A DNA stretch of 64,000 nt from IMGVR_UViG_3300048438_000153:62001-126000; one strand, 5' to 3'. Shown: positions 28,699 to 49,451, numbered from the stretch's first letter. Program-made: numbers and translations. Notes: generated by a model not told the origin, from the letters alone.

Positions 28699-29336
28699 GA
28701 GCTTTAAGCCCGTCTAATCGTAGGGTCTACCCTAACCAACCACAAAACAGCTCAGGCAAGTTGAGCAATAACTCTGAGTACTACGGAGACTTGACGGTCG
28801 CAGATAACAACATCTACCTCTACCAAGACATCACTCCGAAAGCGATGATGGAGCTTGGTATTGCGATCAAGAGCCTGAACAATCAGATTATCTCTCTCAT
28901 CAGTGAGCTAGAGATGTCGAGCGCGCCCACTATCCACCTCCACATCAACTCAGGTGGAGGGTGCGCTTTCAGTGGTCTCGCAGGAGCGAGCCATATCCTT
29001 AACTCTCAAATTCCTGTATCCACCTACGTCGAGGGAAGAGCGGCTTCAGCCGCTACTATTCTTTCTAGCGTGGGCGCGCACAGGTACATCACCGAACACA
29101 GCTTCATGCTAATCCATCAAGTCTCGACAGGTGTGTGGGGGACTTACGAAAACTTGAATGACGAGAAAGAAAGCATGGACTCTCTCATGGAGATGCTTGA
29201 ATCTATTTACCTCAAGCACACCAAGATGAAGAAGAAACAGCTCAAGCAACTCTTAAAGAGGGATCTTTGGATGAACCCTGAGAAATGCTTGGAGCTCGGG
29301 CTTGTTGACGAGATCATCAAGTACGAGCGCACTTGA
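28695..29336 (+). CDS. clpP: ClpP-family serine protease
   Basis: LHINSGGG, AASAAT (catalytic Ser), MLIHQ (His), RDLWM...ELGLVDEI. Start at the ATGA overlap, 28695. Confidence 0.9.
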   Translation: MRALSPSNRRVYPNQPQNSSGKLSNNSEYYGDLTVADNNIYLYQDITPKAMMELGIAIKSLNNQIISLISELEMSSAPTIHLHINSGGGCAFSGLAGASHILNSQIPVSTYVEGRAASAATILSSVGAHRYITEHSFMLIHQVSTGVWGTYENLNDEKESMDSLMEMLESIYLKHTKMKKKQLKQLLKRDLWMNPEKCLELGLVDEIIKYERT

Positions 29337-34189: not shown

Positions 34190-36868
34190 ATGTTTGACGA
34201 CTTTCTCGCAGACATAAGACGACCTGTCATAGAGTCCTACGAATGGATGAAAGAATGTGACCTAATCTTAGGCACGAAAGAGAACATAACTCAAGCCATT
34301 GACGAGTGCATGGCGGTTGAAGTCTACGGTTGCGACATCGAGACTACAGGACTTGACAACCGCGTCTTTGAAGGGCGCACGATGGACTCTATCGTGGGTA
34401 TCGGGATCGCGCCATCTCACGACAAGGCTTATTACTTTCCTATCGGACACAAGTCAGGCTCAGAGTATAACATTCCTTGGTCAATCATCGGACGAGAGTT
34501 TGGGCGTCTGTTCGACCCTTCCACGAAAGCCCGACCTGTCTTCCACAACATCTCTTTCGACGCGCCTTTCTTAGAGTACAACGGCTTCTTCTCGCTCGGG
34601 AAAGATCGGTGGGATGACCACAAGAAATGGGAAGACTCTCTCATCATCAAGTACCTCCTCAACCCACGTCAAAAAGGAGGGCGTGGGCTTAAGGCTCTGT
34701 CAGACAAGCTCTGTGACATGAAGATGATTGAGCTCAATGAGCTATTCCCCCCTGAAGAGGAACAGCGAGACTACTCGACCATTGACCCTTCATGGCAACC
34801 TTGTGTACTCTACGCGGCGGCTGATCCTCTCTGTACTCTCAGAATATGGGATATCATGAGAAAGGAATACGAAGATGCGCCTGAGCACTCTGACTCGATG
34901 TATAACCTCGAAAAGATGTGCTGTATCGCCACCTCATGGATGCACCGATGCCGAGTGTATATTGACCCTGAGAAAGCGATGGAGTCAGCGATTGAAGGTC
35001 AGCGCCTATGGTGGGAGAGTCTACTAGAGGTATATAAGGGCGCGTCTAAGATTCTAGAGAGAGACATCACACCCTCTTTCGTCAAGATCATGCGCGATGG
35101 ATCAAGAGGTCTGATCGAGCCCTTCGACCCCCGAGCCATCTCTGAGGGAGGGAGCGCCAACTACAAAGTGATCGTACAGGAAGCTCGAAGATACGCGCAA
35201 AACACCGCACCTGATCCAACTCAAAAGATCAGTAAGAGTGTGGCTCTGCTCGGTAAGTCTGCTGGTACTGAGAAAGTGGAGTTTCCCTATACGTATGACG
35301 TTCTCTCTCCTCAACAGCTAGGTTTGCTCTTGAGAGAGTTGGGAGTAGATGGTCTGCTCGCCTCTGAGAAGTCAGGCCAAGTAGTCACTAAGGGAGAAGT
35401 TCTCGATGAGGTCATCGAGAAAAACTCTGAGAAACTCCCTTTCATGAAGAAAGTGAAGAACCTCCGTGTTCTCGTCAAGGCGCTCAGCCAATACCTCATC
35501 CCTTTCATAGAGGACATTGGATCTGACGGTACGCTGAAGCCGAAGTTCGATCAGTTCAGTGCTGACACAGGGCGTTTTTCGTGTAAGACTAACAGTAAGC
35601 CCCATATCGTGAGAGACGGCGGTTGTCGCGTACCTTTTCAGGGCATCCCCGCCTATGGAAAAGACAAAGACAAGAAGCCCGCGATCATTTCTTACATGAG
35701 AGATTGTATAGTCGCGCGCGAAGAAGGGTGGTGGCTGACCGCGATTGACTACGCAGGTGTAGAGCTAAGACTCGTAACTAACCTCTCGAAAGAGCCCCTG
35801 TGGATTAAAGCTTTCTTCGAGTGTTCAGACTGTGGGCAACAGTACCCTAGAGAGATGGGGGAAGATGAGATTCCCACACCGACTCCAACCTATTGTGTGT
35901 GTGGGTCGGATCGCATAGGTGATCTGCACACTGTAACTGCGGTTGCTTTCTACGGCGAGGGCGCTAAGGGAAAACCTGATTGGAAAGACAAGCGAGGGAA
36001 CGGAAAGGGATGTAACTTCGCCCTTTCTTACGGAGGCACAGGGAAAGCTGTTCAGCGCACTATCAAGTGCTCTGCTAAGGAAGGGGACGAAAAGTATAAG
36101 ACTTTCACGAGCACTTACAAGACACTCGCCTCTTGGTGGGGGAAACAGAACAAGTTCGCCCATAAACATGGCTATGTTAAGACGGCTTTCGGACGAGTTC
36201 AGCCCCTCCCTGATATCCACGACGAGGATTACAGAAAGTCCTCGAAAGAGGAGAGAAAGGCGGTGAATGGACCTGTTCAGGGAACGAGCGCGGATATCAC
36301 GAAGCTCGCGATGAGTCTCATCTACAGAGAGGTTAAGAAACGAGGGTGGTTCGATAAGCTCAAGATGATCCTTACAGTCCACGACGAGATTGTCTTTGAG
36401 ATCCATGAAGACGTGATCGGAGAGGCTATCCCTGTACTGACTCAGATTATGGCGAGAAACAAAGCAATCGCCAATCAGGGATGGGAAGTCCCTCTCCTTG
36501 TAGACGTAGAGATCGGAAAGACGTGGGGAGTGCCATACGACCTCAAAGACTTAAGGCGAGGGTACAAGGAAAAGCTCGTACCTGACGGCGTTGATGAAAA
36601 GGGGGAGAAGAAGTACAGAGAGGAGCGCGTTCCTGTGCCTGAATCACTCGCTAAGATTTTCTATGTGGGGAGTGAGGCTGATGAGCCTTCTTCAAGCTCG
36701 CCTGAGAAAGAAGAAGGCTCAGGTTCTTCATCCGAAAGCCCCTCTAAGACTTATGTGCTTAAAGAGCTTTCTCAGGACTCCGCGTTCGATTTGGGTATGT
36801 GGCTCTCCCATAATACGGACGGTGTTGTAACGTATGAGGGGAGAGACATCACGGCGCTGTTTTCTTAG
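34190..36868 (+). CDS. polA: DNA polymerase family A with 3'-5' exonuclease
   Basis: ExoI CDIETTGL, ExoII FHNISFD, ExoIII YAAAD; DTGRFSC; motif A IDYAGVELR, motif B RGNGKGCNFALSYG, NGPVQGTSADI, motif C VHDEIV. Confidence 0.95.
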   Translation: MFDDFLADIRRPVIESYEWMKECDLILGTKENITQAIDECMAVEVYGCDIETTGLDNRVFEGRTMDSIVGIGIAPSHDKAYYFPIGHKSGSEYNIPWSIIGREFGRLFDPSTKARPVFHNISFDAPFLEYNGFFSLGKDRWDDHKKWEDSLIIKYLLNPRQKGGRGLKALSDKLCDMKMIELNELFPPEEEQRDYSTIDPSWQPCVLYAAADPLCTLRIWDIMRKEYEDAPEHSDSMYNLEKMCCIATSWMHRCRVYIDPEKAMESAIEGQRLWWESLLEVYKGASKILERDITPSFVKIMRDGSRGLIEPFDPRAISEGGSANYKVIVQEARRYAQNTAPDPTQKISKSVALLGKSAGTEKVEFPYTYDVLSPQQLGLLLRELGVDGLLASEKSGQVVTKGEVLDEVIEKNSEKLPFMKKVKNLRVLVKALSQYLIPFIEDIGSDGTLKPKFDQFSADTGRFSCKTNSKPHIVRDGGCRVPFQGIPAYGKDKDKKPAIISYMRDCIVAREEGWWLTAIDYAGVELRLVTNLSKEPLWIKAFFECSDCGQQYPREMGEDEIPTPTPTYCVCGSDRIGDLHTVTAVAFYGEGAKGKPDWKDKRGNGKGCNFALSYGGTGKAVQRTIKCSAKEGDEKYKTFTSTYKTLASWWGKQNKFAHKHGYVKTAFGRVQPLPDIHDEDYRKSSKEERKAVNGPVQGTSADITKLAMSLIYREVKKRGWFDKLKMILTVHDEIVFEIHEDVIGEAIPVLTQIMARNKAIANQGWEVPLLVDVEIGKTWGVPYDLKDLRRGYKEKLVPDGVDEKGEKKYREERVPVPESLAKIFYVGSEADEPSSSSPEKEEGSGSSSESPSKTYVLKELSQDSAFDLGMWLSHNTDGVVTYEGRDITALFS

Positions 36869-38839: not shown

Positions 38840-39161
38840 GATCCCCCGCAAGCATATTAGAAAGTTCCTCAACAAAGACCCTGAAACCATTGATATTATT
38901 AAGAAATGGCTCGACAAGAATGGGCTGATCATTCTCTTTACTCAAAGAAAAGCAAAGGGGTGGGAAAAAGTTTGGGCCACAGATGGGGGCAATATCTATA
39001 TGAATGATGAGGATCACAACCCTACTTCAGAAGAACTCGACATAAGGATCAGGAAAGTATCTGTGAAAGAGCAAGAGCCATTGCGCGAGGATCTGCTAGG
39101 GAAAGACGTGTCTTTGAGAGACAAACTAGAATACTTAAAAGAGATGGAAAGACCCCTGTAA
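38784..39161 (+). CDS. hypothetical protein
   Basis: Its stop overlaps the next start (TAATG). Exact start uncertain. Confidence 0.5.
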   Translation: MKKEEFGDLTWRRVSPLGKIPRKHIRKFLNKDPETIDIIKKWLDKNGLIILFTQRKAKGWEKVWATDGGNIYMNDEDHNPTSEELDIRIRKVSVKEQEPLREDLLGKDVSLRDKLEYLKEMERPL

Positions 39162-40354
39162 TGTTTTTTGAATATGATAAAGAAAAACCAAAGCTCCTAG
39201 ATGAGACAACAATAAATGGCCCGTCAGGAAACCTTTATATCCCCAAAGGGCTTTGGCAAGACATGATCAAATCTTATGAGAAAGAAGATGTCTTGAACCG
39301 CCTCCGAGACTTAATCAACAAGGGAGTGATTTCTTTCCCTTATCAACACTACAGTAAAGAGGAGGTGCTTGACGAGTTTCAGCGACTCAGGAACTCAGTA
39401 GCTTCTTTCTCTGAAAGCGAGTGGGAGTGCAACCGATTGGTGACTGAAGCCCCTCTCTCATTTAGGAGAGGTAGCTACTACACTCCCAAGTCAGCTCGGG
39501 TTGGGAGTAAGGTGTCTGATTTGTTCACACAGAGAATAAGAATGGAGGTTGGACATCAGAGGTTTCTTTCTCCTATAAGAGCGTGGGAGAGTGAAAGAAA
39601 GTCCTTTCTCAACTATCTCTTCAACCCTGATATGTTTGAAGGAGACATCAACGAAAGATGTCTCAGAGTTTCGCTGAGTATGAGGTCATACATTGCGAGT
39701 CAGTTCAAACCTGAGTCAGCTAAGGTCATTTATGATACCTTTCAAGCCAAGAGAGTCCTAGACTTCAGCGCGGGATGGGGAGATAGACTCGTCGGGTTCC
39801 TCGCAAGTAATGCTGAGAGTTATATAGGGATTGACCCTAACTCTAAACTCCACGAACCCTATCAGAAGATTGTCGATTTCTGTGACGTAGGGAAAGAAAC
39901 AAGGTTCATCTGCGCTCCCGCAGAGGAAGCAGATTTAACGGGTGTTGAGGTGGACTTTATATTCACCTCTCCTCCCTATTTCACTCTCGAAAGGTACAGT
40001 CAGGAAGACACTCAGAGTTGGAAGCGATACCCTAAAATCAACGCTTGGCTAGATGGATTTCTATTTCCTACTTTATCTAAGTGTTGGAATTGCCTTGAAG
40101 AAGGGGGGAGAGTACTCGTCAATATCGCCGACGCTTATACGAATGGAGAGCGAGAGGAAATATGTCAGCCGATGTTAAGACATATGGAATCTCTTGGGGC
40201 TACTTACGAGGGAGTCATAGGTTACGAAATGGGAGCGAGACCAGGTAAAAACATGGATAATATCGGCAAGACTTTCTGTGAGCCGATATGGGTTTGGAGC
40301 AAAGGGGAAGCTCCCGAACCTAAGTGGAAATCAGATACGTTTTTGGGAGTCTAA
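39161..40354 (+). CDS. DNA amino-methyltransferase (N4-C/N6-A type), paralogue 1
   Basis: Motif I VLDFSAGWGDR, IGIDPN, motif IV FTSPPYF. Confidence 0.85.
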   Translation: MFFEYDKEKPKLLDETTINGPSGNLYIPKGLWQDMIKSYEKEDVLNRLRDLINKGVISFPYQHYSKEEVLDEFQRLRNSVASFSESEWECNRLVTEAPLSFRRGSYYTPKSARVGSKVSDLFTQRIRMEVGHQRFLSPIRAWESERKSFLNYLFNPDMFEGDINERCLRVSLSMRSYIASQFKPESAKVIYDTFQAKRVLDFSAGWGDRLVGFLASNAESYIGIDPNSKLHEPYQKIVDFCDVGKETRFICAPAEEADLTGVEVDFIFTSPPYFTLERYSQEDTQSWKRYPKINAWLDGFLFPTLSKCWNCLEEGGRVLVNIADAYTNGEREEICQPMLRHMESLGATYEGVIGYEMGARPGKNMDNIGKTFCEPIWVWSKGEAPEPKWKSDTFLGV

Positions 40355-40355
40355 T

Positions 40356-41066
40356 ATGTGGGGTTATTATGGGTCAAAAGCAAAGATTGTTAGTCAATAC
40401 CCGAAGCCGACCAAAGATAAGATTATAGAGCCATTTGCAGGAACTGCTCAATATGCTCTTAAATACTTTGATAGAGACATAGAACTCTATGATAAATATG
40501 AGCTGATCGTAAATCTTTGGAAGTGGTTACAGAAATGTAGCCCAAAAGACATCACATCACTACCTCACTTAAAGGCAGGCGAGAGCGTAGATGATTACGA
40601 ATGGGATTGTGATGAAGCAAAACACTTAATAGGCTTCATCATTTCAGGCGGTGCTACTCAGCCAAAAAAATCAGTGACTAAGTGGAAAGCGGTGATCAGG
40701 CCGAACACTCAAAACTACAAGAAAACTCTCATTTCTTCTAACCTATACAAGATCAGGCATTGGAACATCGAGTGTAAGTCTTATGAAGAAATAGATAACC
40801 AAGAAGCTACTTGGTTCATTGACCCTCCTTATGAAGAGGGGGGGGTATATTACAGACACAGCTCAAAAAACATAGATTTCAGCCACCTTTCAGAATGGTG
40901 TCAGGAACGTGAGGGAGAAGTGATTGTCTGTGAGAAACAAGGTGCGTCTTGGCTTCCCTTTGAACCGCTTACAGAAGTGAAAGGCTTGAAGGCACAGAGC
41001 TTCCAAGAAGCAGTCTGGTTGAAGAACATGAGTTTACCTAAGCAATTAGACTTGTTTGGACTTTAA
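40356..41066 (+). CDS. Dam/D12-like N6-adenine methyltransferase (short form)
   Basis: YYGSK, IEPFAGTA, FIDPPY. True start MWGYY at 40356. Ends KQLDLFGL. Confidence 0.85.
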   Translation: MWGYYGSKAKIVSQYPKPTKDKIIEPFAGTAQYALKYFDRDIELYDKYELIVNLWKWLQKCSPKDITSLPHLKAGESVDDYEWDCDEAKHLIGFIISGGATQPKKSVTKWKAVIRPNTQNYKKTLISSNLYKIRHWNIECKSYEEIDNQEATWFIDPPYEEGGVYYRHSSKNIDFSHLSEWCQEREGEVIVCEKQGASWLPFEPLTEVKGLKAQSFQEAVWLKNMSLPKQLDLFGL

Positions 41067-41069
41067 GAA

Positions 41070-41246
41070 ATGAAGAACCAAATATTTAACGAGGTCTGCT
41101 TAGAAACCATGTCTCGAATGAGCGATAGCTCAATAGACAAAAACATGAATAACATCGGCAAGACCTTCTGTGAGCCGATATGGGTTTGGAGTAAGGGCGA
41201 AGCCCCTGAGCCCAAGTGGAACCAAGACACTTATTTCGGAGTATGA
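41070..41246 (+). pseudogene. 58-aa chimeric relic: beta-class MTase-like N-terminus fused to an SPPY-paralogue C-terminus
   Basis: MKNQIFNEVCLETMSRMSDSSID|KNMNNIGKTFCEPIWVWSKGEAPEPKWNQDTYFGV*. The second half nearly duplicates the end of 39161-40354. Confidence 0.75.
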
Positions 41247-41249
41247 AGC

Positions 41250-42401
41250 ATGAGTCTTACTAGAAAGAGCTTTCTCAACTCTAAAGGTGAGATATACCTC
41301 ACACAGAAAGAGATTAGAACCCTTGCGAAAGAACATGACATAGAAGAGATTATAGAGGTACTCGGTAAGATCGTAGACGAGTTGCCTTTCCCACTCACTG
41401 AGTACACAGATCAAGAGGTCATAACCGATTTTAATAGGTTAAAAAACACACACCTTGAAGTTATACGGGGCGGTTGGGTGAGCCACAGGATAGATGAGGC
41501 GATCTCTCCTTTATACAGAGGGGAGTCAATAAGATTCCCTAAGACAAGAAACATAGGGGGCAAAGTCTCTAATCAATACACAGAGGCGTTAAGGTTATCT
41601 ACGCCTCATGCGAGATACAAAAGCCACAAAGATCTTTGGTATGCTAAGAGAAAGTATTGGTTAAAGTATTTCTTCAACATCAAGATGCACACAGGAAATC
41701 TCGAACAGGGTAAGCTGAGGCAAGGTTTGTCAGGTCAATATTACTGCTCTCAGTTTAAACCTCTCATCGCTAAGTCAATGTACGATACTTTCCAAGCTAA
41801 GAGAGTCTTAGACTTCAGCGCGGGATGGGGAGACAGACTCGTGGGCTTCCTCGCGAGCGGAGCTGAGAGTTATGTCGGGATAGACCCTAACTCTAAGCTA
41901 CATGAACCCTATCAGAAGATCGCTGATTCTATTTCTGATAGGGTAGCTTCGACTTTCGTCAGCCCTGCGGAAGATTTTGATTATAACTCTGTTGAGTACG
42001 ACTTTGTGTTTACTAGCCCTCCCTATTTCGACCTAGAGAGATACAGCAACGAAGGCACTCAAAGTTGGAAAAGGTACTCAGAATTTGAAGAGTGGGTTCA
42101 AAACTTCCTGTTTAAAACGCTAACCGCCTGTTGGAGAAACCTCTCAGACAACGGTCGGATGATAATTAACATATCTGACATATATTCAAAGGGAGCAAAG
42201 AGAGAGATCTGTAGCCCCATGTTAAGACATATGGAGTCTCTAGGCGCTACCTATGAAGGTGTTATAGGGTATGAGATGGCCCATAAGACTAGCAAATCGG
42301 TTAAGCGACACGATCTGCCTTTCTGCGAGCCTATGTTCGTGTGGTCAAAAGGAAACCCACCTGAGCCTCAGTGGAACTCCCAACTCTTTTTTGAGATCTA
42401 A
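41250..42401 (+). CDS. DNA amino-methyltransferase, paralogue 2
   Basis: VLDFSAGWGDR and FTSPPYF. Confidence 0.85.
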   Translation: MSLTRKSFLNSKGEIYLTQKEIRTLAKEHDIEEIIEVLGKIVDELPFPLTEYTDQEVITDFNRLKNTHLEVIRGGWVSHRIDEAISPLYRGESIRFPKTRNIGGKVSNQYTEALRLSTPHARYKSHKDLWYAKRKYWLKYFFNIKMHTGNLEQGKLRQGLSGQYYCSQFKPLIAKSMYDTFQAKRVLDFSAGWGDRLVGFLASGAESYVGIDPNSKLHEPYQKIADSISDRVASTFVSPAEDFDYNSVEYDFVFTSPPYFDLERYSNEGTQSWKRYSEFEEWVQNFLFKTLTACWRNLSDNGRMIINISDIYSKGAKREICSPMLRHMESLGATYEGVIGYEMAHKTSKSVKRHDLPFCEPMFVWSKGNPPEPQWNSQLFFEI

Positions 42402-42537
42402 GACTCCTGACCCTGAGCCTAAGTGGACACAAGACAACTTCTTCGGAGTTTAAGAAATGCAGAACCAAATCTTCAATGAGGAGTACTTCAAGATGTCGAA
42501 AGTAAGACTAGAAAACACTCAGGAGTATCTTTTCTAA
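42402..42537 (+). pseudogene. two relics: an orphan MTase tail (PDPEPKWTQDNFFGV*) and an internally deleted MTase mini-ORF at 42457-42537
   Basis: The mini-ORF MQNQIFNEEYFKMSKVRLENTQEYLF* joins an N-terminus like that at 41070 to a beta-MTase-type C-terminal EEY..S..RL helix. Confidence 0.65.
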
Positions 42538-43238
42538 TGCACCACATACAAGAAAGAAACTGCGCTGAAGCGTGGATTAAAGCCACTCAAGACATCCTCT
42601 CTAAAGGAGAGAATATGGGTGGCCTATACGAGATCCTCAATATGGGGATAGAAATCACTTCCTCTGAGGTATGTCCTGTCTTTGACAGCCATTTCAGAGA
42701 CGTCTTCGGAGACGAGAGAATAGACTATGCTAAGTCTGTCACTTTCATCGAGCCTAAGCCCAACCCTCTCTTTCCCGATTTAAGAGAATACGAGCAGAAC
42801 AAGACGGGGAAATGGACAAATAGCTATTGGGGTCGGATGTTCTCTTGGAACGGCGGATTCAACCAAGTCGAACAGACGATTAAGAGACTGAAAGAGAACA
42901 AGCAAGCCAAGACCATCGTAATCGGAGTCTACGACCCTCAGACTGACGGAAAGAAAGTCATGGGAGGGATGCCCTGTCTGCTCACCATAGACCTCAAGCC
43001 TAGAGGCGGTAAACTTAACCTCACAGCTAACTTTAGGAGTCAGGCTGTCTCCAAGTCAGGGTATGCGGATTACATGGCTCTCGTAGAGTTCTGTGACTTC
43101 CTCTGCAAAGAGAGCGGGTGTCTCGACTTTGGGTTAGTGACTTCTTTCGCTCACTCATGTCATGTGAGGACTCAAAACGGAGAACTTAAGAAATCCAAGG
43201 AGCTGATGAGGAGATATCATGAAGAAATGGGTAGCTGA
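42537..43238 (+). CDS. thymidylate-synthase-fold pyrimidine-modifying enzyme (dCMP hydroxymethylase-like)
   Basis: YWGR, NQVEQTIKRL, MPC (catalytic Cys), FRSQAVSKSGYAD, HSCH. Confidence 0.8.
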   Translation: MHHIQERNCAEAWIKATQDILSKGENMGGLYEILNMGIEITSSEVCPVFDSHFRDVFGDERIDYAKSVTFIEPKPNPLFPDLREYEQNKTGKWTNSYWGRMFSWNGGFNQVEQTIKRLKENKQAKTIVIGVYDPQTDGKKVMGGMPCLLTIDLKPRGGKLNLTANFRSQAVSKSGYADYMALVEFCDFLCKESGCLDFGLVTSFAHSCHVRTQNGELKKSKELMRRYHEEMGS

Positions 43239-44130
43239 TTTTAAGAGTATTCTTTACTCCACTATAGAGGCTCTCCCCCCTGAAGTGAGTCTTTCTTTCT
43301 CGGGTGGCGTTGACTCCTCTATGCTTTTATTCGCTATGATTGATTTAGGCAGACCCCCTACAGAGCTCATCACATTCAAGATTGTAGGGGAATACTCTAA
43401 GGACTTAGATTTCGCTAGAAAGACCGCCCATCATTACGGCATCCCTTTGAGGGTTGCTCAGATCCCAAGTAACCCTCAAAAGAAAGACCTCGAAAGAGAG
43501 ATTAAAGAGATTCTTAGAGAAACGAGAGTTTCTCGGAGCATAGACACTCAGGTGTCCTATGCCTACTCCTACATGACCTCAATCACCTCAACTGACCATC
43601 TTGTTCTCGGGTTCTACGAGGACTTGTACTGCCTCAACAATAAGAAAAACTCTGTCATGTATAGCAATATGCTAAAGGGAAATCTCTCTGAGAAAGAGTT
43701 CGTTTCTTGGATCAATCAAGAAAGAGTCGAAATATATCAAGGCAAGGTTGCAGGGCGCAAAGCTCAGATTGACCACAACTATGTCGTGATCTCTAACTAC
43801 ATTGAGTCTAAGGGTATTCAGACTATCTGTCCCCTCAGAAATCAGGAGATGTTGGATCATTGTCTTAAGAAAGGGTTTGAAGATCTGACGTTCGATCTGA
43901 ATGGAAAGAGAAGGTCTAAGTGGTTCATCAAAGACATGATCTTTAAGAAGTATTTCGACCAACACAAAACCAACATATCTAACTTTCATACATCGGGAAA
44001 AGAAGGTGGGCTGAAAGGTCTGCATCAGAGGGTGCTTCTAACAGGATCACCATACAAAGACACAAGAGCAATTTACAATCAAATACTTAAAGACATTGAG
44101 TTTGAAGAGAGCGCGCATTTCCTATGCTAA
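43219..44130 (+). CDS. asparagine-synthetase-like PP-loop ATP pyrophosphatase/amidoligase (no glutaminase domain)
   Basis: SLSFSGGVDSS, DLDFARKTAHHYGI, CPLRN, SKWFIK. Confidence 0.8.
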   Translation: MKKWVADFKSILYSTIEALPPEVSLSFSGGVDSSMLLFAMIDLGRPPTELITFKIVGEYSKDLDFARKTAHHYGIPLRVAQIPSNPQKKDLEREIKEILRETRVSRSIDTQVSYAYSYMTSITSTDHLVLGFYEDLYCLNNKKNSVMYSNMLKGNLSEKEFVSWINQERVEIYQGKVAGRKAQIDHNYVVISNYIESKGIQTICPLRNQEMLDHCLKKGFEDLTFDLNGKRRSKWFIKDMIFKKYFDQHKTNISNFHTSGKEGGLKGLHQRVLLTGSPYKDTRAIYNQILKDIEFEESAHFLC

Positions 44131-44957
44131 ACCTACACACACCTGTCGAAACTTACCGCATAGAAAGCACTGAGGTAGACGTTAAGAGAGATGACCTTCA
44201 TAATGGAGATCTCGACCTCCCTCCTTGGGCAAAGCTAGAGGGGGTGCGCCAACTACTCCTCTCAGACTGCTTCGATAAAAGAAAGCCCATCGTACACCTA
44301 ACTATCAGAGGTTCATACACAGGGTGGGCTCTTTCTTATTTCGGGAGAGAATACGGGTACGACATCAAGATCGCCTATCCGAAAACCAAGTCTTACCCTC
44401 AAGAAATGCTCGATAAGATCACTCAATATGGAGGGGAACTTGTGCCTCTCCGACATAATATGGTGGCGGTTCTCTCAGCTCAGGTTAAGAAGATGGCTAA
44501 AGAGCGCGGGTGGCAAATGAGCCCCGACGCTTTCAACCACCCTGTCTATGTAAAGTCTTGGAAAGAAAGATCTGCTTCTTTCTTTCAAGAGAACGACTAT
44601 CAGACCCTCGTCATTCAAGGGGGGAGTGGAGTTACGAGTGTTGGACTCATTCAGAGTTTTCTCGGTGTAGATTACATTGCGGGTCAGATGTTTGAGCCCA
44701 CATACGAGGGAAAGAAAGTAATCATCATCTCCACCTCAAGTGTAAAGACCGTGAAGTCTGCGCTCGTATCAAATATGGGGAGTGTGCCTTCGTGTGTAGA
44801 AATCTACAAATCTGAACATGACTTCTATGACGAGATTCCTACTCATGCGACACCGTTCCCCTGTAACCGTCTGTGGGACAAGAAAGCGTGGGTTTGGATG
44901 ACTCAGAATGTGGGTGAGTTGAAGGATAGAACTCTCTTTTGGAACTTGGGGGCATAA
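44124..44957 (+). CDS. PLP-dependent fold-type II enzyme (D-cysteine desulfhydrase/ACC deaminase-like)
   Basis: TPVE...VKRDDL...WAK (PLP Lys), GGSGVT phosphate loop, WDKKAW, LFWNLG. Confidence 0.8.
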   Translation: MLNLHTPVETYRIESTEVDVKRDDLHNGDLDLPPWAKLEGVRQLLLSDCFDKRKPIVHLTIRGSYTGWALSYFGREYGYDIKIAYPKTKSYPQEMLDKITQYGGELVPLRHNMVAVLSAQVKKMAKERGWQMSPDAFNHPVYVKSWKERSASFFQENDYQTLVIQGGSGVTSVGLIQSFLGVDYIAGQMFEPTYEGKKVIIISTSSVKTVKSALVSNMGSVPSCVEIYKSEHDFYDEIPTHATPFPCNRLWDKKAWVWMTQNVGELKDRTLFWNLGA

Positions 44958-44960
44958 GCT

Positions 44961-46184
44961 GTGTTTTTTGAGTACGAGAAAGAACTGCCTAAAACAGATC
45001 TCTCTGACTATAGTCTCCTCAAGAATGGGCAAATCTCTATACCTTCCTATGTATGGCGCGAGATTAAAAACAGCTTCGATAAGAAAGAGGTGATCGAGCA
45101 CATCTCTCAACTTATACAAGATCACAACCTCCCCTACCCGAGTAGGACATACACAAAAGCTGTACTCGACAGGGACTTCAGAAAGCTCAAGAGCGAGTCA
45201 TGTGGTGTGAAAGAGGGATCTTGGGAGTGCTTGAGGACGATCCCTAATGTCACTCTTAAATACCTTAATCGTCAGTGCTACATACAGGCTAGTCAACATG
45301 GTCTAAAAGTCTCGGATCAGCAGACGCATCTCTCTCGCATGAAATGCGCTCACTTCGAGCACAAGAGTCCGTACAGAGAATGGACTCGGCAAGGGTGCAA
45401 GTCGAAGGTCAGATACGTTCTAAGAGTGTTGTGGAGTCTATCAGAAGGAGACGCCCTTAAGAACGGTGTGTGCGAGAAGCAACTGAGAGACTGCTTGAGG
45501 TTGGGCAACTACATGGCGAGTCAGTTCAAGCCCTCATGCGCTAAGACCCTGTATGATTTCTTTCAGGCTAAGAGAGTCTTAGACCTAAGCTCAGGGTGGG
45601 GTGACAGGCTCGTAGGTTTTCTTGCGAGTGGGGCTGAGAGCTATGTCGGGATAGACCCTAACTCTGAACTCCACGAACCCTATCAGAAGATCGCTGACTT
45701 CTGTGACACAGGGAAGGAAACACGATTCATCTGTGATCCCGCAGAGGACGCAGACTTAACGGGTGTTGAGGTGGACTTCGTATTTACGAGCCCCCCTTAC
45801 TTTGACGTTGAAAAGTACAGTGAAGAAGACACTCAGAGTTGGAAACGATATAAGTCGAAAGACCTATGGCTGAATAACTTCTTTCTCCCATCGCTCACTA
45901 AGGCTTGGGAGGCTCTTTCTGAGGGAGGGAGGATAGCCATCAACATCGCAGACAAGGGTCACTCAAGAGAAGATGTGGGCGAGGACATCTGTAGCCCCAT
46001 GTTAAGACATATGGAGTCTCTAGGCGCTACCTATGAGGGGATTATCGGGTATAGGATGAACAAGAGGCCGGGTGACAGAATGGGCGCGGTTGGAGGCGCG
46101 GTTTTCTGTGAGCCGATATGGGTTTGGAGTAAGGGTGAAGCCCCTGATCCCAAGTGGACTCAAGACACCTATTTCGGAGTTTAA
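44961..46184 (+). CDS. DNA amino-methyltransferase, paralogue 3
   Basis: VLDLSSGWGDR and FTSPPYF; GTG start. Confidence 0.85.
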   Translation: MFFEYEKELPKTDLSDYSLLKNGQISIPSYVWREIKNSFDKKEVIEHISQLIQDHNLPYPSRTYTKAVLDRDFRKLKSESCGVKEGSWECLRTIPNVTLKYLNRQCYIQASQHGLKVSDQQTHLSRMKCAHFEHKSPYREWTRQGCKSKVRYVLRVLWSLSEGDALKNGVCEKQLRDCLRLGNYMASQFKPSCAKTLYDFFQAKRVLDLSSGWGDRLVGFLASGAESYVGIDPNSELHEPYQKIADFCDTGKETRFICDPAEDADLTGVEVDFVFTSPPYFDVEKYSEEDTQSWKRYKSKDLWLNNFFLPSLTKAWEALSEGGRIAINIADKGHSREDVGEDICSPMLRHMESLGATYEGIIGYRMNKRPGDRMGAVGGAVFCEPIWVWSKGEAPDPKWTQDTYFGV

Positions 46185-46185
46185 G

Positions 46186-47364
46186 ATGTTTTTCGATTAC
46201 GAAAAAGAGATCACATCTCTCGATGAGATCAAGTATATTAAGAACGGTTATTTCCACATCCTCCCTAGTGAGTGGGAGATGCTTAGAAAGTCTTTTACCA
46301 AGGAAGAAATAAAAGACCATATCGCGCCCATCCTGAGTTCATTACCGTACCCCTATTTCGAGTATTCAGAGAAAGAGCTGAGGAGAGATTTCTCTAAGCT
46401 GAAATCACTCTCGAATAAACTCAAGCAAGGGGAATGGGTAGCTACAAGACAAGCAGCAGAAAGAGACACACTCTTTCTCGGTCAGAGTATCTATATGGAC
46501 TGCTACTACACAGGGAAAGGAATATCTGATCAGTACACTCAAGAGGCGCGCTTTAAATGCTCTTATAGAGCTGTCGGTAACTCCCCTTACGACGAGTGGG
46601 TCAGTGCGGACAAGAAGAACTCTTTCTTAAGATGTTTCTTCGGCATCTCAGAGAGGGACATCTACGAAAGAGGAGGAGTCAACAAGCAGACACTCAGGCG
46701 CGCTCTAAAGATGCACACATACACAGCGAGTCAGTTCAAGGCTGAAGCCTCTAAAACCCTGTATGATTTCTTTCAGGCTAAGAGAGTCTTAGACTTCAGT
46801 GCAGGATGGGGTGACAGGCTCGTGGGTTTCCTCGCTAGCGGAGCAGATAGTTATGTCGGGATAGACCCTAACTCTAAGCTACATGAACCCTATCAGAAGA
46901 TCGTCGATTTCTGTAACACAGGGAAGGAAACACGATTCATCTGTGCTCCCGCAGAGGACGCAGACTTAACAGGTGTTGAGGTGGACTTCGTGTTTACAAG
47001 TCCTCCCTATTTTGACATAGAGAGATACAGTGACGAAGACACTCAGAGTTGGAAACGATACCCTGAAATAGACTCTTGGGTCGAGGGCTTCTTCCTCCCC
47101 ACTCTAAGCAAGTGTTGGAGTGTTCTTTCTGAGGGCGGGAGAATACTTGTCAACATCGCCGATAAGAAGGGCAACGACATCTGTAGCCCCATGTTAAGAC
47201 ATATGGAGTCTCTAGGCGCTACCTATGAGGGTGTTATAGGCTACCGTATGTCAGAAAGAGGAGGGCAAAAGACCACCGTACCGAGCTGTGAGCCGATATG
47301 GGTTTGGTCTAAAGGCGACGCGCCCGAACCTAAGTGGACTCAAGACACCTATTTCGGAGTTTAA
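46186..47364 (+). CDS. DNA amino-methyltransferase, paralogue 4
   Basis: True start MFFDYEKE at 46186; VLDFSAGWGDR and FTSPPYF. Confidence 0.85.
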   Translation: MFFDYEKEITSLDEIKYIKNGYFHILPSEWEMLRKSFTKEEIKDHIAPILSSLPYPYFEYSEKELRRDFSKLKSLSNKLKQGEWVATRQAAERDTLFLGQSIYMDCYYTGKGISDQYTQEARFKCSYRAVGNSPYDEWVSADKKNSFLRCFFGISERDIYERGGVNKQTLRRALKMHTYTASQFKAEASKTLYDFFQAKRVLDFSAGWGDRLVGFLASGADSYVGIDPNSKLHEPYQKIVDFCNTGKETRFICAPAEDADLTGVEVDFVFTSPPYFDIERYSDEDTQSWKRYPEIDSWVEGFFLPTLSKCWSVLSEGGRILVNIADKKGNDICSPMLRHMESLGATYEGVIGYRMSERGGQKTTVPSCEPIWVWSKGDAPEPKWTQDTYFGV

Positions 47365-47562: not shown

Positions 47563-47682
47563 ATCTTTTCTCCGATATAGGTGTTGGTGTGTGGGAATGA
47601 GTCGGAACTGACTCATGAACATTTATACCGATCAGTTTTACTTTTATACCTAGTTAAGAGAAAAGTAGAAAGAGGGACACTC

Positions 47683-48354
47683 ATGAGAACAATCACAGCA
47701 AGAGTCGCCACAAAGTTCTTAAAGAAAGCAGCGGAAAGTCTTGAGATACACATCTATGACTTCGATGGAACTCTGTTCCGTAGTCCTGAAGCTCCTGAGT
47801 GGTGGAGTAAAAGAAGATATGGTCAGTGGCACTCCAACCAATCTTCATTGGGTCAGCCCTTTGTGCCTAACAACCCTTCTTCAGACTATTGGATTAACGG
47901 CGTAGTAGAGGAAGCAAAGAAGTCCATAGCAGACTTGAATACTTGGGCAGTCATGTGTACAGGACGCATCGACACAGGAGCTCTCAGATACAGAGTGGCT
48001 GAGTTACTGAGGCAAGAGGGTCTTGATTTCGATCAGAACTTTCTTAACGACACAGGTAGGCTGACAAGACCCTACAAGAAAGTGACTCTAATCGAACTCC
48101 TGAAGCAGTTCCCACAGGTCAAGAAAGTCGTTGTGTGGGAGGACACTCAGAAAAACCTCGACGCGCTCGAAAGCATCTGCGACAGGATCGGGATCGAGTT
48201 TGAAGGGAAGCTCATTTCTGAGAGGCTTCTCTCTTCAAACCACATCTCAGAGGATGAATACATAGACTTTCTTAGAGGAGAGCTCTCCGCTAAAGAGTTC
48301 ACTCAGATCTATAAGGCTCTACAGAAGAGTAGAAAGAGAAAGCAAGAATTATGA
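47683..48354 (+). CDS. HAD-superfamily phosphatase (Swiss-Army-Knife RNA-repair type) with RVATKFL leader
   Basis: IYDFDGTLFRSP, MCTGR, YKK, WED. Confidence 0.8.
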   Translation: MRTITARVATKFLKKAAESLEIHIYDFDGTLFRSPEAPEWWSKRRYGQWHSNQSSLGQPFVPNNPSSDYWINGVVEEAKKSIADLNTWAVMCTGRIDTGALRYRVAELLRQEGLDFDQNFLNDTGRLTRPYKKVTLIELLKQFPQVKKVVVWEDTQKNLDALESICDRIGIEFEGKLISERLLSSNHISEDEYIDFLRGELSAKEFTQIYKALQKSRKRKQEL

Positions 48355-48671
48355 GAAAGACAGCCTCTTCAAAGAGAGTCGCAAAGATGTACTTCTTAGC
48401 GAGCACAAACTTGCCTCTCTTAGAGGAAGCCTTACCAAACACCTTCTCAGAAATCGAGCCCTTTAACCGAGTCTCTTGTAGTCACGACATTATGGAGAGC
48501 CTCAAGGCTGAGAAAGAGTTCAACCAAGAGACTCTCTTAAGGGTCTTGTCTGAGTACACTCAAGTAGATACCAACCTTGTCATGGCTGATGTCTCTCACT
48601 TATTCTCAGACGTGGGAGTAGCTCAGAAAGAAAAGCTCTTATCAGCTCTCACCACAGATAGAGAGCTGTAG
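48351..48671 (+). CDS. hypothetical protein with MRKTAS-RVAKMYF leader
   Basis: Leader motif; ATGA overlap. Confidence 0.6.
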   Translation: MRKTASSKRVAKMYFLASTNLPLLEEALPNTFSEIEPFNRVSCSHDIMESLKAEKEFNQETLLRVLSEYTQVDTNLVMADVSHLFSDVGVAQKEKLLSALTTDREL

Positions 48672-49451
48672 AGTGAGGTAGGTAGAAAGAGAGTTAAGCT
48701 CTTTCACTACCTTGAAGGGGTCGAACTTAAGACGACGATTATCACCTTTAAGTCTAGAAAGAGGCTTTCGGAGTTTTTTCTGAACCTCTTGAGCCATTGA
48801 CTCTTCAAGCTTTGACGTAAGCGCGAAGGCTGACTCAAGATCCTCGATCAAGTCTTGACCAACTTGACCTTGCTCTGCGTCAAGAACAGCCTCTTCAAGT
48901 GCTCTCTTAAGCTTCATAAGAACAGGCTTGCAAGAGATGACTGATTGGTTCGCCCACGAGCCTGCGTGAGACTCTAGACCCACAGGATACTGACCGAGAG
49001 GGAGCTTCCTGTTGTTTGGAGCGCGGTGGTAGTCTCCAAAGGCAGAAATATAACCCTTCTTAACCTTACTTAGCTCAAGGCGTTGAAGCTCGTACTTTGC
49101 ACCCGCGAGGTTCTTGAAGGTATCGCGTCTCTCTTGGAAACGAGGCCCAAGACGACCATACCTCTTGATGAGTGTGTAGCCCCCGACATTCTGAGGGTTC
49201 TGAACGATCAGCATCTCGTAATACTTAGACTGATTCTTCTCGCTATCAATCTTGTAAAGCATGGAGGCTTCCCCCTCCCTTGCTTTCTGACGTGTAAGAC
49301 CCTCAGATTTGAGGTAGGGCTTACCCGCAGCAGTCTTATTGATTTGTTGAGAGGCGCGCTTCGCCATAGCCTGACGAACATAAGCTCTTTTCTCTAGATA
49401 CTCGATGCGGTCTTCAAGGGCTGTCAGATTTTCTGAAGATAACCTATACAT
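48642..49451 (-). CDS. WGR-domain protein
   Basis: KIDSEKNQSKYYEM...LIKRYGRLG...A..EL..L..SKVKKGY. Confidence 0.75.
   Translation of the reverse strand: MYRLSSENLTALEDRIEYLEKRAYVRQAMAKRASQQINKTAAGKPYLKSEGLTRQKAREGEASMLYKIDSEKNQSKYYEMLIVQNPQNVGGYTLIKRYGRLGPRFQERRDTFKNLAGAKYELQRLELSKVKKGYISAFGDYHRAPNNRKLPLGQYPVGLESHAGSWANQSVISCKPVLMKLKRALEEAVLDAEQGQVGQDLIEDLESAFALTSKLEESMAQEVQKKLRKPLSRLKGDNRRLKFDPFKVVKELNSLSTYLTLQLSICGES

What the first reader, a model, noticed from the sequence alone, without database searches (positions are those of the whole stretch)
40320..47364. Sliding-clamp-type C-terminal tags on the modification enzymes
The Dam-like MTase ends KQLDLFGL, the canonical QL[S/D]LF beta-clamp motif. 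The others end SQLFFEI, QDTYFGV (twice, plus one relic), SDTFLGV, QDNFFGV and QEYLF (relics), usually after a Pro-rich linker, and PolA ends ITALFS. Inference: the enzymes dock on a clamp and modify DNA co-replicationally. The relic mini-ORFs keep precisely this tail and could act as clamp-binding peptides.
Basis: partly seen in the sequence, partly recalled or inferred. Interest (0 to 1): 0.6.

Follow-up and report, generated by a model that had tools for sequence, protein, structure and literature searches.

The report
Clamp-docking tails on phage DNA methyltransferases
In this uncultured marine jumbo phage, several unrelated DNA-modifying enzymes carry short add-on C-terminal tails resembling bacterial sliding-clamp-binding motifs, and the phage encodes its own beta clamp and clamp loader, so the enzymes probably ride the clamp to modify new DNA, although binding is not yet shown.

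Summary
In detail: every quoted tail is at the stated place.

**What is new**
- **The tails are add-ons, not part of the folds.** Most homologues of the Dam-like enzyme stop right after the catalytic core. Those with an extension are strongly enriched for Qxx[L/F]F-type ends. Distant homologues of the four paralogous methyltransferases end at ...EPIWIWKK with no tail.
- **The tail is portable.** The same QDNFFGV tail sits on an unrelated P-loop/GNAT enzyme in related phages.
- **A third, unlinked methyltransferase is also tagged.** It ends [Q]ISIFDLF after a variable linker.
- **The phage has its own clamp system.** It encodes a divergent beta (DnaN-type) sliding clamp that Pfam misses (AF2 plus Foldseek, TM about 0.8), and DnaX-like clamp-loader subunits. 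These lie outside the window.
- **A second phage lineage repeats the pattern.** There the Dam-like gene lies between clamp-loader genes. All four modification enzymes, and two of the other 202 ORFs, end in L[F/W].

**Limits**
- Binding itself is untested; the one complex prediction gave no verdict.
- The "relics" are deletion scars of lost methyltransferase genes. Nothing indicates they act as peptides.
- The PolA tail is conserved, but its role is open.

**Verdict:** a plausible, testable prokaryotic-virus analogue of DNMT1-PCNA. Confidence is about 0.6.

The parts
39161..40354 (+). MTase paralogue A (397 aa): N-terminal ~190-aa domain plus an amino-MTase domain with SPPY. Tail SDTFLGV at 40331-40351.
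   Evidence: ORF. Pfam PF01555 N6_N4_Mtase, E 4.7e-7.
40356..41066 (+). Dam-like D12-class N6-adenine MTase (236 aa). Its core ends ...EAVWLKN and is followed by MSLP-KQLDLFGL. The tail (41040-41063) is the canonical beta-clamp pentapeptide QLDLF.
   Evidence: Pfam PF02086, E 4.4e-7. In the homologue survey, 68 of 120 homologues stop fewer than 8 aa after the core. Of the 52 with longer extensions, 14 match Q..phi[FWLAI] (shuffle mean 0.84).
41070..41246 (+). Relic 1 (58-aa ORF). The first 23 aa come from a 254-aa beta-class MTase (MKNQIFNEVCLETMSRMSDSSID). They are fused in frame to the last ~35 aa of a paralogue (...EPIWVWSKGEAPEPKWNQDTYFGV).
   Evidence: Alignment to the intact gene L006:10715-11479.
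41250..42401 (+). MTase paralogue B (383 aa). Tail SQLFFEI at 42378-42398, belonging to the subfamily with NPxLFF[ST]F-type ends.
   Evidence: Pfam PF01555, E 3e-8. Subfamily tails.
42400..42453 (+). Orphan tail-coding remnant (KTPDPEPKWTQDNFFGV plus stop), immediately after the stop of paralogue B and in another frame. Only an ATG 130 nt upstream, inside paralogue B, is in frame with it.
   Evidence: (repeat family D4).
42457..42537 (+). Relic 2 (26-aa ORF MQNQIFNEEYFKMSKVRLENTQEYLF). It joins the first 8 aa and the last 18 aa of the 254-aa beta-class MTase, whose native tail is QTQEYFF.
   Evidence: (repeat D8).
42537..44957 (+). Three enzymes without tails: thymidylate-synthase-like (42537-43238), Asn-synthase/PP-loop-like (43219-44130) and PLP-dependent (44124-44957). 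They probably belong to a base-hypermodification pathway.
   Evidence: Pfam PF00303, PF00733 and PF00291 (PF00291 at 30.8 bits, below its 35-bit cut-off). C-termini.
44961..46184 (+). MTase paralogue C (407 aa). Tail QDTYFGV at 46161-46181.
   Evidence: Identical to P0139.
46186..47364 (+). MTase paralogue D (392 aa). Tail QDTYFGV at 47341-47361.
   Evidence: In the AF2 model (pLDDT 93) the last strand is residues 367-375 and residues 376-392 are coil. Block pLDDT falls from 98 to 78 to 45.
34190..36868 (+). Family-A DNA polymerase (892 aa). The Pfam domain ends at residue 780. A low-complexity linker and a ~45-aa module follow (about 36530-36865), ending GRDITALFS.
   Evidence: Pfam PF00476, E 2.9e-64. 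The extension is conserved in about 45 homologues, which end [GE]R[DSN][IV]xxL[FL].

Best explanation
The C-terminal tails are short linear docking motifs of the bacterial clamp-binding type (core phi-F/W, often Q-x-[D/N/S]-phi-F, here frequently followed by G-[V/L/I]).

They tether DNA-polymer-modifying enzymes to a beta-type sliding clamp, most likely the phage's own. The tagged enzymes are:
- four paralogous amino-MTases;
- a Dam-like MTase;
- a 233-aa MTase elsewhere in the genome;
- in relatives, a 254-aa MTase, a P-loop/GNAT enzyme and Mom.

The phage clamp is a 419-aa DnaN homologue at G000:C1:254864-256123. It would be loaded by the phage's DnaX-like loader. Clamps left on, or moving with, newly made phage DNA would concentrate the enzymes there. 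Nascent DNA would then be modified quickly, plausibly before host nucleases can cut it.

- **Shown:** the motifs, their add-on and portable nature, their conservation, and the existence and fold of the clamp and loader genes.
- **Inferred:** binding to the clamp cleft, phage versus host clamp, co-replicational timing, and the protective role.
For: 1. **Canonical motif.** The Dam-like tail QLDLF equals the published consensus QL(S/D)LF (PMC9690074).

2. **Add-on in the Dam-like family.** Of 120 homologues, 68 end fewer than 8 aa after the core. Of the 52 with longer extensions, 23 end [LIMFY][FW]x0-3 (shuffle mean 3.2, maximum 9 in 2000) and 14 match Q..phi[FWLAI] (shuffle mean 0.84, maximum 5).

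3. **Add-on in the paralogue family.**
   - About 70 distant homologues (33-39% identity) end ...EPIWIWKK(L) with no tail.
   - In the jumbo-phage clade the 16-aa appendage G-x-APEPKW-x-QDNFFGV is as conserved as the catalytic domain: 2.5-2.8 bits, against about 1.8 bits for the N-terminal domain.
   - Synonymous codon differences between copies point to selection on the peptide.

4. **Flexible end.** AF2 places the tail after the last strand as coil with falling confidence.

5. **Portability.**
   - An unrelated P-loop + GNAT enzyme ends ...KKQDNFFGV in L006 and ...KVQDNFFEV in L030.
   - Its PHROG profile ends about 20 aa before the tail.

6. **A further tagged MTase.** An unlinked 233-aa MTase ends LSIFDLF, QISIFDLFD or VSIFDF in three genomes, each time after a variable hydrophilic linker.

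7. **Shared pattern.** The Dam-like and paralogue tails both fit Q-x-[D/N]-phi-F-G-[L/V/I], which suggests one partner.

8. **Partner present.**
   - P0241 hits phrog_947 'DNA polymerase processivity factor' (E 1.7e-14).
   - A profile of its homologues hits solved beta clamps over their full length (8dt6_A, E 2.5e-18).
   - The AF2 model (pLDDT 95.9) matches bacterial beta clamps with TM about 0.8.
   - Clamp-loader subunits are present (PF13177, E 2.7e-25 and 2.6e-7).

9. **Independent lineage G060 (35% GC).**
   - Gene order: PolA fragment / beta clamp (phrog_947, E 5e-15) / Mom / MTase ... DnaX-like / Dam-like / delta-prime-like / SAM synthetase / delta / MTase.
   - All four modification enzymes end L[F/W] (VSLF, NVLW, SKLW, VNLW).
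   - Only two of the other 202 ORFs do, and both are tiny. The hypergeometric p is about 2e-7, with a pattern chosen post hoc.

10. **Conserved neighbour.** The PD-(D/E)XK nuclease just upstream of the clamp gene, one small ORF away, keeps a near-C-terminal G-F-[LV]-D-L-x-F motif across very distant phages.

11. **Co-occurrence.** Both tail-clade genomes that are at least 90% complete (G006, G010) carry the clamp. The complete tail-less genomes G011, G012 and G004 do not.
Against: - No binding evidence of any kind exists.
- In the paralogue tail Q is only 50% conserved. Position 2 is Asp, where known motifs prefer Leu or Ala.
- The clamp/tail co-occurrence is essentially one clade versus others, so it amounts to one evolutionary event.
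- Some tail-less relatives sit near a ~240-aa ORF with a weak match to the clamp profile. Having a clamp of some kind may therefore not by itself predict tails.
- The clamp is only 12-15% identical to solved clamps. In a profile alignment only some E. coli cleft residues are kept (G174, L177, P242; H175 becomes F/Y), and the C-terminal part of the cleft could not be aligned.
- Recombination at the conserved 3' ends is active here, as the relics show. It could spread tails without selection, although conservation of the GNAT tail across two phages argues against this.
Confidence: 0.6

Rival explanations
1. The tails are docking motifs, but for another hub: a phage SSB-like protein, a helicase or primase, a recombination protein, or an unknown scaffold.
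For: - The paralogue tail departs from the canonical motif (Asp at position 2, Q in only 50% of members).
- Several other phage proteins have conserved acidic or aromatic C-termini, which suggests more than one tail-reading system. Examples are the RecA-like ...ELDDLF and the 249-aa ...DLDDLF.
Against: - The Dam-like tail is exactly the beta-clamp consensus.
- Its shared ...phi-F-G-[LVI] ending with the paralogue tail points to one partner.
- Tagged enzymes are interleaved with the clamp and loader genes in G060.
Confidence: 0.2
2. The tails bind the host's DnaN rather than the phage clamp. The phage enzymes would then use, or compete for, host clamps.
For: - QLDLF is the bacterial consensus.
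- Some tailed Dam-like homologues lie on contigs where no phage clamp was seen (L147, L148 and the contig carrying P0028). Only 10-20 kb of each was visible.
Against: - The phage keeps its own clamp and loader.
- Both near-complete genomes of the tail clade have the clamp.
- The host is unknown, so this could not be tested.
Confidence: 0.15
3. The tails have no docking role. They are structural or autoregulatory ends of the enzymes, or neutral 3'-end scars spread by recombination between conserved gene ends.
For: - The window shows recombination and deletion at exactly these 3' ends (relics; repeats D4 and D8).
- The PEPKW part has intermediate AF2 confidence and may pack on the domain.
Against: - Tail-less homologues are plainly viable enzymes.
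- The same tail occurs on a non-homologous fold and is conserved between phages, with synonymous changes.
- Unrelated MTase families converge on phi-F/W ends in two phage lineages.
Confidence: 0.1
4. The tails are C-terminal degrons or virion-packaging signals.
For: - Non-polar C-termini can be protease tags.
- The window encodes a ClpP-family protease (28653-29336).
Against: - ClpP/S49-family proteases in phages are usually prohead proteases (established knowledge).
- Nothing links the tagged enzymes to structural genes.
- The motif matches clamp ligands, not LAA-type degrons.
Confidence: 0.05

Closest known systems
Bacterial beta-clamp-binding motif (CBM; QL[S/D]LF pentapeptide, QLxLxL hexapeptide) on Pol II/III/IV/V, MutS/L, Hda and others
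   Same: - A short C-terminal or otherwise exposed peptide with a Q-x-x-phi-F core after a flexible linker.
- The Dam-like tail is the exact consensus.
- A DnaN-type clamp is encoded in the same genome.
   Different: - The clients here are DNA-modification enzymes (MTases, GNAT, Mom). I found none described in the literature searched.
- The commonest variant, QDNFFGV, has Asp at position 2 and a G-V extension.
- The clamp is phage-encoded and very divergent.
DNMT1-PCNA (PIP-box-mediated recruitment of the maintenance methyltransferase to replication forks in eukaryotes)
   Same: The same logic: a DNA methyltransferase is tethered to the sliding clamp so that newly replicated DNA is methylated preferentially (PMC9690074).
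   Different: - A different clamp family (beta, not PCNA) and a different motif (not a PIP box).
- Many enzymes are tagged at once.
- The presumed purpose is anti-restriction or self-marking, not epigenetic inheritance.
T4 gp45 clamp clients (gp43, gp33, gp55 C-terminal clamp-binding tails) and phage Mu MuC, which uses the host beta clamp for late transcription
   Same: Phage proteins other than the polymerase use C-terminal hydrophobic tails to ride a clamp (the T4 part is established knowledge; Mu: PMC12867686, listed).
   Different: - No gp45 or PCNA homologue was found here; the clamp is DnaN-type.
- The clients are modification enzymes rather than transcription factors.
Jumbo phages with a T7-like PolA and an RFC-like clamp loader 'but no detectable clamp' (Iyer et al. 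2021, PMC7824862)
   Same: PolA as the only recognised polymerase, together with clamp-loader genes.
   Different: - Here a clamp is detectable by PHROG, profile and fold searches.
- Whether this phage belongs to that subgroup was not tested.

Membership tests
Beta-clamp-binding-motif (CBM) client proteins | Peptide matching QL[S/D]LF or QLxLxL (loosely Q-x-x-[L/M/I/F]-[F/L]) | tested here: met
   - Dam-like QLDLF is exact.
- The 233-aa MTase orthologue QISIF and the 254-aa MTase QEYFF fit the loose form.
- The paralogues' QDTYF/QDNFF fit only the loose form, and Q is 50% conserved.
Beta-clamp-binding-motif (CBM) client proteins | Motif lies in an exposed, flexible segment, typically at a terminus after a linker | tested here: met
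   - In the AF2 model of paralogue D the tail is coil after the last strand, with block pLDDT 78 then 45.
- Linkers vary between orthologues.
Beta-clamp-binding-motif (CBM) client proteins | A cognate beta clamp is available | tested here: met
   Phage DnaN homologue P0241 and clamp-loader subunits. Any host DnaN is unknown.
Beta-clamp-binding-motif (CBM) client proteins | Physical binding of the motif in the hydrophobic cleft between clamp domains II and III | not testable with these tools
   Needs peptide binding or a co-structure. The one complex prediction returned no verdict and is not used as evidence.
DnaN / beta sliding clamp (for P0241, outside the window) | Three-domain beta-clamp fold and profile similarity over the full length | tested here: met
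   - The A2 profile hits 8dt6_A (E 2.5e-18) and 1vpk, and E. coli 1mmi at 4.5e-5.
- Foldseek: 6man_A E 3.8e-22, TM 0.79-0.82 normalised by target.
- Single-sequence Pfam searches miss it.
DnaN / beta sliding clamp (for P0241, outside the window) | Head-to-tail dimer ring and a conserved ligand cleft | tested here: inconclusive
   - The dimer was not modelled.
- In the profile alignment to E. coli beta, G174, L177 and P242 are kept, H175 becomes F/Y and T172 becomes C. The C-terminal strand could not be aligned.
D12-class N6-adenine DNA MTase (Dam-like) | Pfam PF02086 above its cut-off and a DPPY catalytic motif | tested here: met
   30.3 bits against a cut-off of 22. The sequence reads WFIDPPYEE.
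N6_N4 amino-MTase (PF01555) for paralogues A-D | Pfam hit above its cut-off, SAM motif I and an [S/D/N]PPY motif IV | tested here: met
   - PF01555 scores 30.4, 34.3 and 31.7 bits for A, B and D against a cut-off of 26.7. C scores 23.9, below the cut-off.
- VLDFSAGWGDRLVG and TSPPYF are invariant in the family.
- The nearest folds are Trm11-type amino-MTases.
- The target base was not determined.
PIP-box / PCNA clients | Qxx[I/L/M]xx[F/Y][F/Y] and a PCNA-type clamp | tested here: not met
   In ...KWNQDNFFGV the Q lies 3 residues before FF, not 6. There is no PCNA_N or gp45 hit in the genome.

The most novel reading that the evidence does not exclude
A phage-encoded beta clamp serves as a tool-belt for a whole arsenal of DNA-modifying enzymes: at least four MTase families, a GNAT-type enzyme and Mom. 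Each enzyme acquired a C-terminal clamp tag independently. Phage DNA would then be chemically marked at the replication fork itself. The same clamp would also serve a family-A polymerase. The arrangement recurs in at least two unrelated phage lineages.
Probability: 0.45. Interest if true: 0.8.

Novelty: new variant of a known kind. Interest (0 to 1): 0.66.

Why it matters
Clamp-coupled DNA methylation is textbook biology in eukaryotes (DNMT1-PCNA). I found no description of it for bacteria or their viruses in the literature searched.

If the tags bind the clamp, three things follow:

- It would explain how phages with many methyltransferases and hypermodification enzymes protect nascent genomes fast enough to escape restriction.
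- It would add a new client class to the beta-clamp interactome.
- It would give a simple sequence signature for finding enzymes that act on replicating DNA in uncultured phages: an add-on phi-F/W C-terminus in a phage that encodes a phrog_947-type clamp.

It may also bear on a published puzzle. PolA-type jumbo phages were reported to have clamp loaders 'but no detectable clamp' (PMC7824862). Here such a clamp is detectable.

Tried and rejected
- **Complex prediction.** `complex prediction` with the phage clamp (alignment A2) and residues 361-392 of paralogue D gave no verdict: ipSAE 0.12 and 0.05 against a mark of 0.32 (after three busy refusals). It counts neither for nor against binding. 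The 30-residue minimum forced in the hydrophobic last strand, which may have hurt.
- **Single-sequence clamp searches.** Pfam searches of the genome for clamps (PF00712, PF02768, PF02916, PF00705) found nothing. A PHROG hit and a profile of homologues were needed to find the clamp.
- **Other blank or failed searches.**
  - PF07733 (Pol III alpha) is absent.
  - Megablast of the region against cultured phages found no match.
  - tblastn of paralogue D found only distant MTase-domain hits in Vibrio, Staphylococcus and Bacteroides phages.
  - The clamp hits only one uncultured 485-kb phage. The host remains unknown.
  - `search for related loci` with alignment A2 failed for lack of a conserved block.
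  - hhalign of A2 against the single G060 clamp sequence was uninformative. PHROG confirmed that clamp instead.
- **Wider co-occurrence test.** A test over 46 further records was uninformative because nearly all are fragments under 40% complete.
- **Neighbourhoods of other tailed Dam-like homologues** (P0028, P0096, P0104) showed no clamp within the 10-20 kb visible.
- **Cleft mapping.** Mapping E. coli cleft residues onto the phage clamp was only partly possible at 12-15% identity.
- **Rejected readings.**
  - A PIP-box reading: the spacing is wrong and there is no PCNA.
  - Tails as part of the MTase fold: tail-less homologues exist.
  - Relics as functional peptides: they are deletion scars.
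- **Length limit.** `search for homologous proteins` sees only proteins of 0.55-1.75 times the query length, so fusions and fragments may have been missed.
- **Paper search.** One search timed out.

Full report
**Setting.**
- The window is G000:C1:62001-126000 of a 275,102-bp IMG/VR virus record that is linear and 88% complete.
- It has no close cultured relative.
- Homologues come from marine and other metagenomes, including Tara.
- The flagged stretch is a + strand block of DNA-modification genes downstream of a family-A DNA polymerase.

- *Gene families.*
  - Four genes (A, B, C, D) are paralogues. Each has an N-terminal domain of about 190 aa and an amino-methyltransferase domain with invariant VLDFSAGWGDRLVG and TSPPYF (PF01555).
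  - The gene at 40356-41066 is a D12-class Dam-like enzyme (PF02086; it carries DPPY).
- *Beyond chance.*
  - The pattern Q..[LIMFY][FW]x0-3 at the C-terminus matches 4 of 272 ORFs in the whole genome, against 0.39 expected from shuffles.
  - All four hits are methyltransferases or their relics.
- *Independence.* Because the paralogues share ancestry, the window holds three independent tail-bearing families, not eight.

**The tails are add-ons, not part of the folds.**

- *Dam-like family.*
  - 68 of the best 120 homologues end within 8 residues of the conserved core (...E-V-I-W-T-K-x).
  - 52 carry longer extensions. Of these, 23 end [LIMFY][FW]x0-3 (shuffle mean 3.2, maximum 9 in 2000) and 14 fit Q..phi[FWLAI] (shuffle mean 0.84, maximum 5). 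Examples are QVDLFGV, QIELF, QLNLF, QLKMF, QSSLF and KNDLF/W.
- *Paralogue family.*
  - About 70 distant relatives (33-39% identity) in other viral contigs stop at ...FCEPIWIWKK(L).
  - The 16-residue appendage G-x-A-P-E-P-K-W-x-Q-D-N-F-F-G-V is confined to a jumbo-phage clade.
  - Within that clade the tail is as conserved as the catalytic domain: 2.5-2.8 bits per column, against about 1.8 for the N-terminal domain.
  - Q itself is only 50% conserved. The aromatic pair is 79% and 89% conserved.
  - Tail codons differ synonymously between copies.
- *Structure.* The AF2 model of paralogue D has mean pLDDT 93. The last strand is residues 367-375 and the remaining 17 residues are coil, with confidence falling from 98 to 78 to 45.

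**The tails are portable.** In the related phage locus L006 the gene order is as follows.

| Gene | Tail |
|---|---|
| paralogue | ...KSDNFFGV |
| Dam-like | ...KQVDLFGI |
| intact 254-aa beta-class MTase (PF01555, E 1.8e-41) | ...SQTQEYFF |
| paralogue | ...KTENFFGV |
| 383-aa P-loop + GNAT acetyltransferase-like protein | ...GQEDRSKKQDNFFGV |

- The GNAT protein is not homologous to the methyltransferases. Its PHROG profile ends about 20 residues before the tail.
- Its orthologue in another phage (L030, 83% identity) keeps ...KPKVQDNFFEV with synonymous changes.
- Elsewhere in the window's own genome a 233-aa N6_N4 MTase (G000:C1:247516-248217) ends ...KEGRTLSIFDLF. Its orthologues in two further genomes end ...KGEQISIFDLFD and ...KGGMVSIFDF, each after a different hydrophilic linker.
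- The Dam-like and paralogue tails share the frame Q-x-[D/N]-phi-F-G-[L/V/I]. This suggests they address the same site.

**A partner exists.**

- *The clamp.*
  - Single-sequence Pfam searches found no clamp.
  - A 419-aa protein at G000:C1:254864-256123 hits phrog_947 'DNA polymerase processivity factor' (E 1.7e-14).
  - It has 263 homologues, mostly 370-390 aa long.
  - A profile of 110 of them matches solved bacterial beta clamps end to end (8dt6_A, E 2.5e-18; E. coli 1mmi, 4.5e-5).
  - The AF2 model (pLDDT 95.9) superposes on bacterial beta clamps with TM about 0.8.
- *The loader.* The genome also encodes a DnaX-like clamp-loader subunit (436 aa, PF13177, E 2.7e-25) and a second, smaller subunit.
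- *The polymerase.* There is no Pol III alpha. PolA is the only polymerase recognised.
- *Synteny.* The clamp lies in a block RecA / SbcC-like / SbcD-like / PD-(D/E)XK nuclease / clamp ... Toprim ... DnaX-like. This block is shared with very distant phages.
- *The nuclease.* Just upstream of the clamp gene, one small ORF away, it keeps a near-C-terminal G-F-[LV]-D-L-x-F motif in all five genomes examined. This fits a clamp that reads phi-x-D-L-x-F-type peptides.

**An independent lineage shows the same thing.**

- A Dam-like homologue of 55-60% identity (P0053) lies on a 141,933-bp viral contig (G060, 35% GC, 89% complete). There it sits between clamp-loader genes.
- The local order is: PolA fragment / beta clamp (phrog_947, E 5e-15) / Mom / N6_N4 MTase / ... 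/ RecA / ... / DnaX-like / Dam-like / delta-prime-like / SAM synthetase / delta-like / MTase.
- All four modification enzymes with an intact C-terminus end L[F/W]: VSLF, NVLW, SKLW and VNLW.
- Across the 206 ORFs of that genome, only two others end this way. Both are tiny ORFs of 50 and 80 aa.
- The hypergeometric p is about 2e-7. The pattern was chosen after looking at the data.

**Co-occurrence.**

- Both tail-clade genomes that are at least 90% complete (G006, 375 kb; G010, 290 kb) carry the clamp (E 2e-89 and 2e-85).
- The complete genomes with tail-less homologues (G011, G012, G004) do not.
- This is one clade against others, so it counts as weak evidence.
- Some tail-less relatives have a ~240-aa ORF nearby with a weak match to the clamp profile.

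**The relics.** They are deletion scars.

- *Relic 1* (41070-41246) joins the first 23 residues of the 254-aa MTase to the last ~35 residues of a paralogue.
- *Relic 2* (42457-42537) joins that MTase's first 8 and last 18 residues, across an N-E microhomology.
- *The orphan tail* (42400-42453) follows the stop of paralogue B in another frame.
- A second decayed Dam + 254-aa-MTase cassette lies at G000:C1:~146987-147400 on the minus strand.
- Nothing suggests that these remnants are maintained as peptides.

**PolA.**

- The Pfam polymerase domain ends at residue 780.
- A low-complexity linker and a ~45-aa module follow, ending GRDITALFS.
- About 45 homologues conserve the module and its ending [GE]R[DSN][IV]xxL[FL].
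- A clamp-binding role is plausible if the clamp is the polymerase's processivity factor. It is no more than a lead.

**Mechanism proposed.**

- *Model.* The tags dock DNA-polymer-modifying enzymes in the hydrophobic cleft of a beta clamp, most likely the phage's own. Clamps on nascent phage DNA then concentrate the enzymes where unmodified DNA appears.
- *Untagged enzymes.* The three tail-less enzymes in the middle of the cluster (ThyA-like, Asn-synthase-like, PLP-dependent) are the kind that usually act on nucleotides or small substrates. If so, they would not need a tag (inference).
- *Shown.* The motifs, their add-on, portable and conserved nature, and the clamp and loader genes and the clamp fold.
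- *Inferred.* Binding, which clamp is used, timing and purpose.

**Comparison with what is known.**

- The motif class is the bacterial clamp-binding motif, QL(S/D)LF. The closest functional analogy is DNMT1-PCNA (PMC9690074).
- Two full-text searches found no description of a clamp-binding motif on a bacterial or phage DNA methyltransferase.
- Iyer et al. (PMC7824862) noted PolA-type jumbo phages that have clamp loaders but no detectable clamp.
- I therefore rate this a new variant of a known kind, with confidence 0.6 in the clamp-docking explanation.

Noticed in passing
G000:C1:254864-256123 (+), outside the window (L001:11865-13124): A divergent DnaN-type beta sliding clamp (419 aa). Pfam single-sequence searches miss it. 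PHROG, profile and fold searches find it. It lies in a conserved block with RecA, SbcCD-like genes and a PD-(D/E)XK nuclease.
   Followed up: yes
G000:C1:240642-241952 (-) and 218782-219429 (-), outside the window: Clamp-loader subunits (DnaX-like, 436 aa; a second of 215 aa) in a phage whose only recognised polymerase is family A. There is no Pol III alpha. This may relate to the published 'clamp loader without a clamp' jumbo-phage subgroup.
   Followed up: partly
window 42537-44957 (+): ThyA-like, Asn-synthase/PP-loop-like and PLP-dependent genes sit between the MTase paralogues and are conserved in G006 and G010. This looks like a base-hypermodification pathway. None of the three carries a tail.
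   Followed up: partly
L001:10549-11532 (G000:C1:253548-254531) and orthologues in G006, G010, L166, L167: The PD-(D/E)XK nuclease just upstream of the clamp gene, one small ORF away, keeps a near-C-terminal G-F-[LV]-D-L-x-F motif after a variable linker, across phages whose clamps are only about 25-30% identical.
   Followed up: partly
G000:C1:~146987-147400 (-), outside the window: A second decayed cassette. It holds a frame-broken fragment of the Dam-like C-terminus, followed by a 96-aa ORF that is the C-terminal part of the 254-aa MTase (about its last 60 residues align) and ends INQTQEYFF.
   Followed up: partly
L006:12660-13811; L030:4799-5980; L060:7328-8368: A P-loop + GNAT enzyme (phrog_11143, function unknown) next to the MTases. 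It carries the QDNFFGV/QDNFFEV tail in two phages and a different aromatic end (LNKFFQF) in a third. It may be a DNA-acylating enzyme.
   Followed up: partly
window 31835-33346 (-): A 503-aa protein with a weak match to the eukaryotic-type topoisomerase IB catalytic core (PF01028, E 2e-6).
   Followed up: no
window 47581-48354 (+) and 48642-49451 (-): A HAD_SAK_1 domain protein (a family from RNA-repair 'Swiss Army Knife' proteins) and a WGR-domain protein lie directly downstream of the MTase block.
   Followed up: no
G000:C1:158209-158886 (-) and orthologues: A small Toprim (primase-like) protein with a conserved C-terminal ...AL[MRK]R[YML]F end in three genomes. It is possibly another tail, or simply part of the domain.
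   Followed up: no
G060 (IMGVR_UViG_3300029305_002546), L149:11510-12292: A SAM-synthetase-like gene is embedded between clamp-loader subunits and MTases. The phage may supply its own methyl donor for the tagged enzymes.
   Followed up: no
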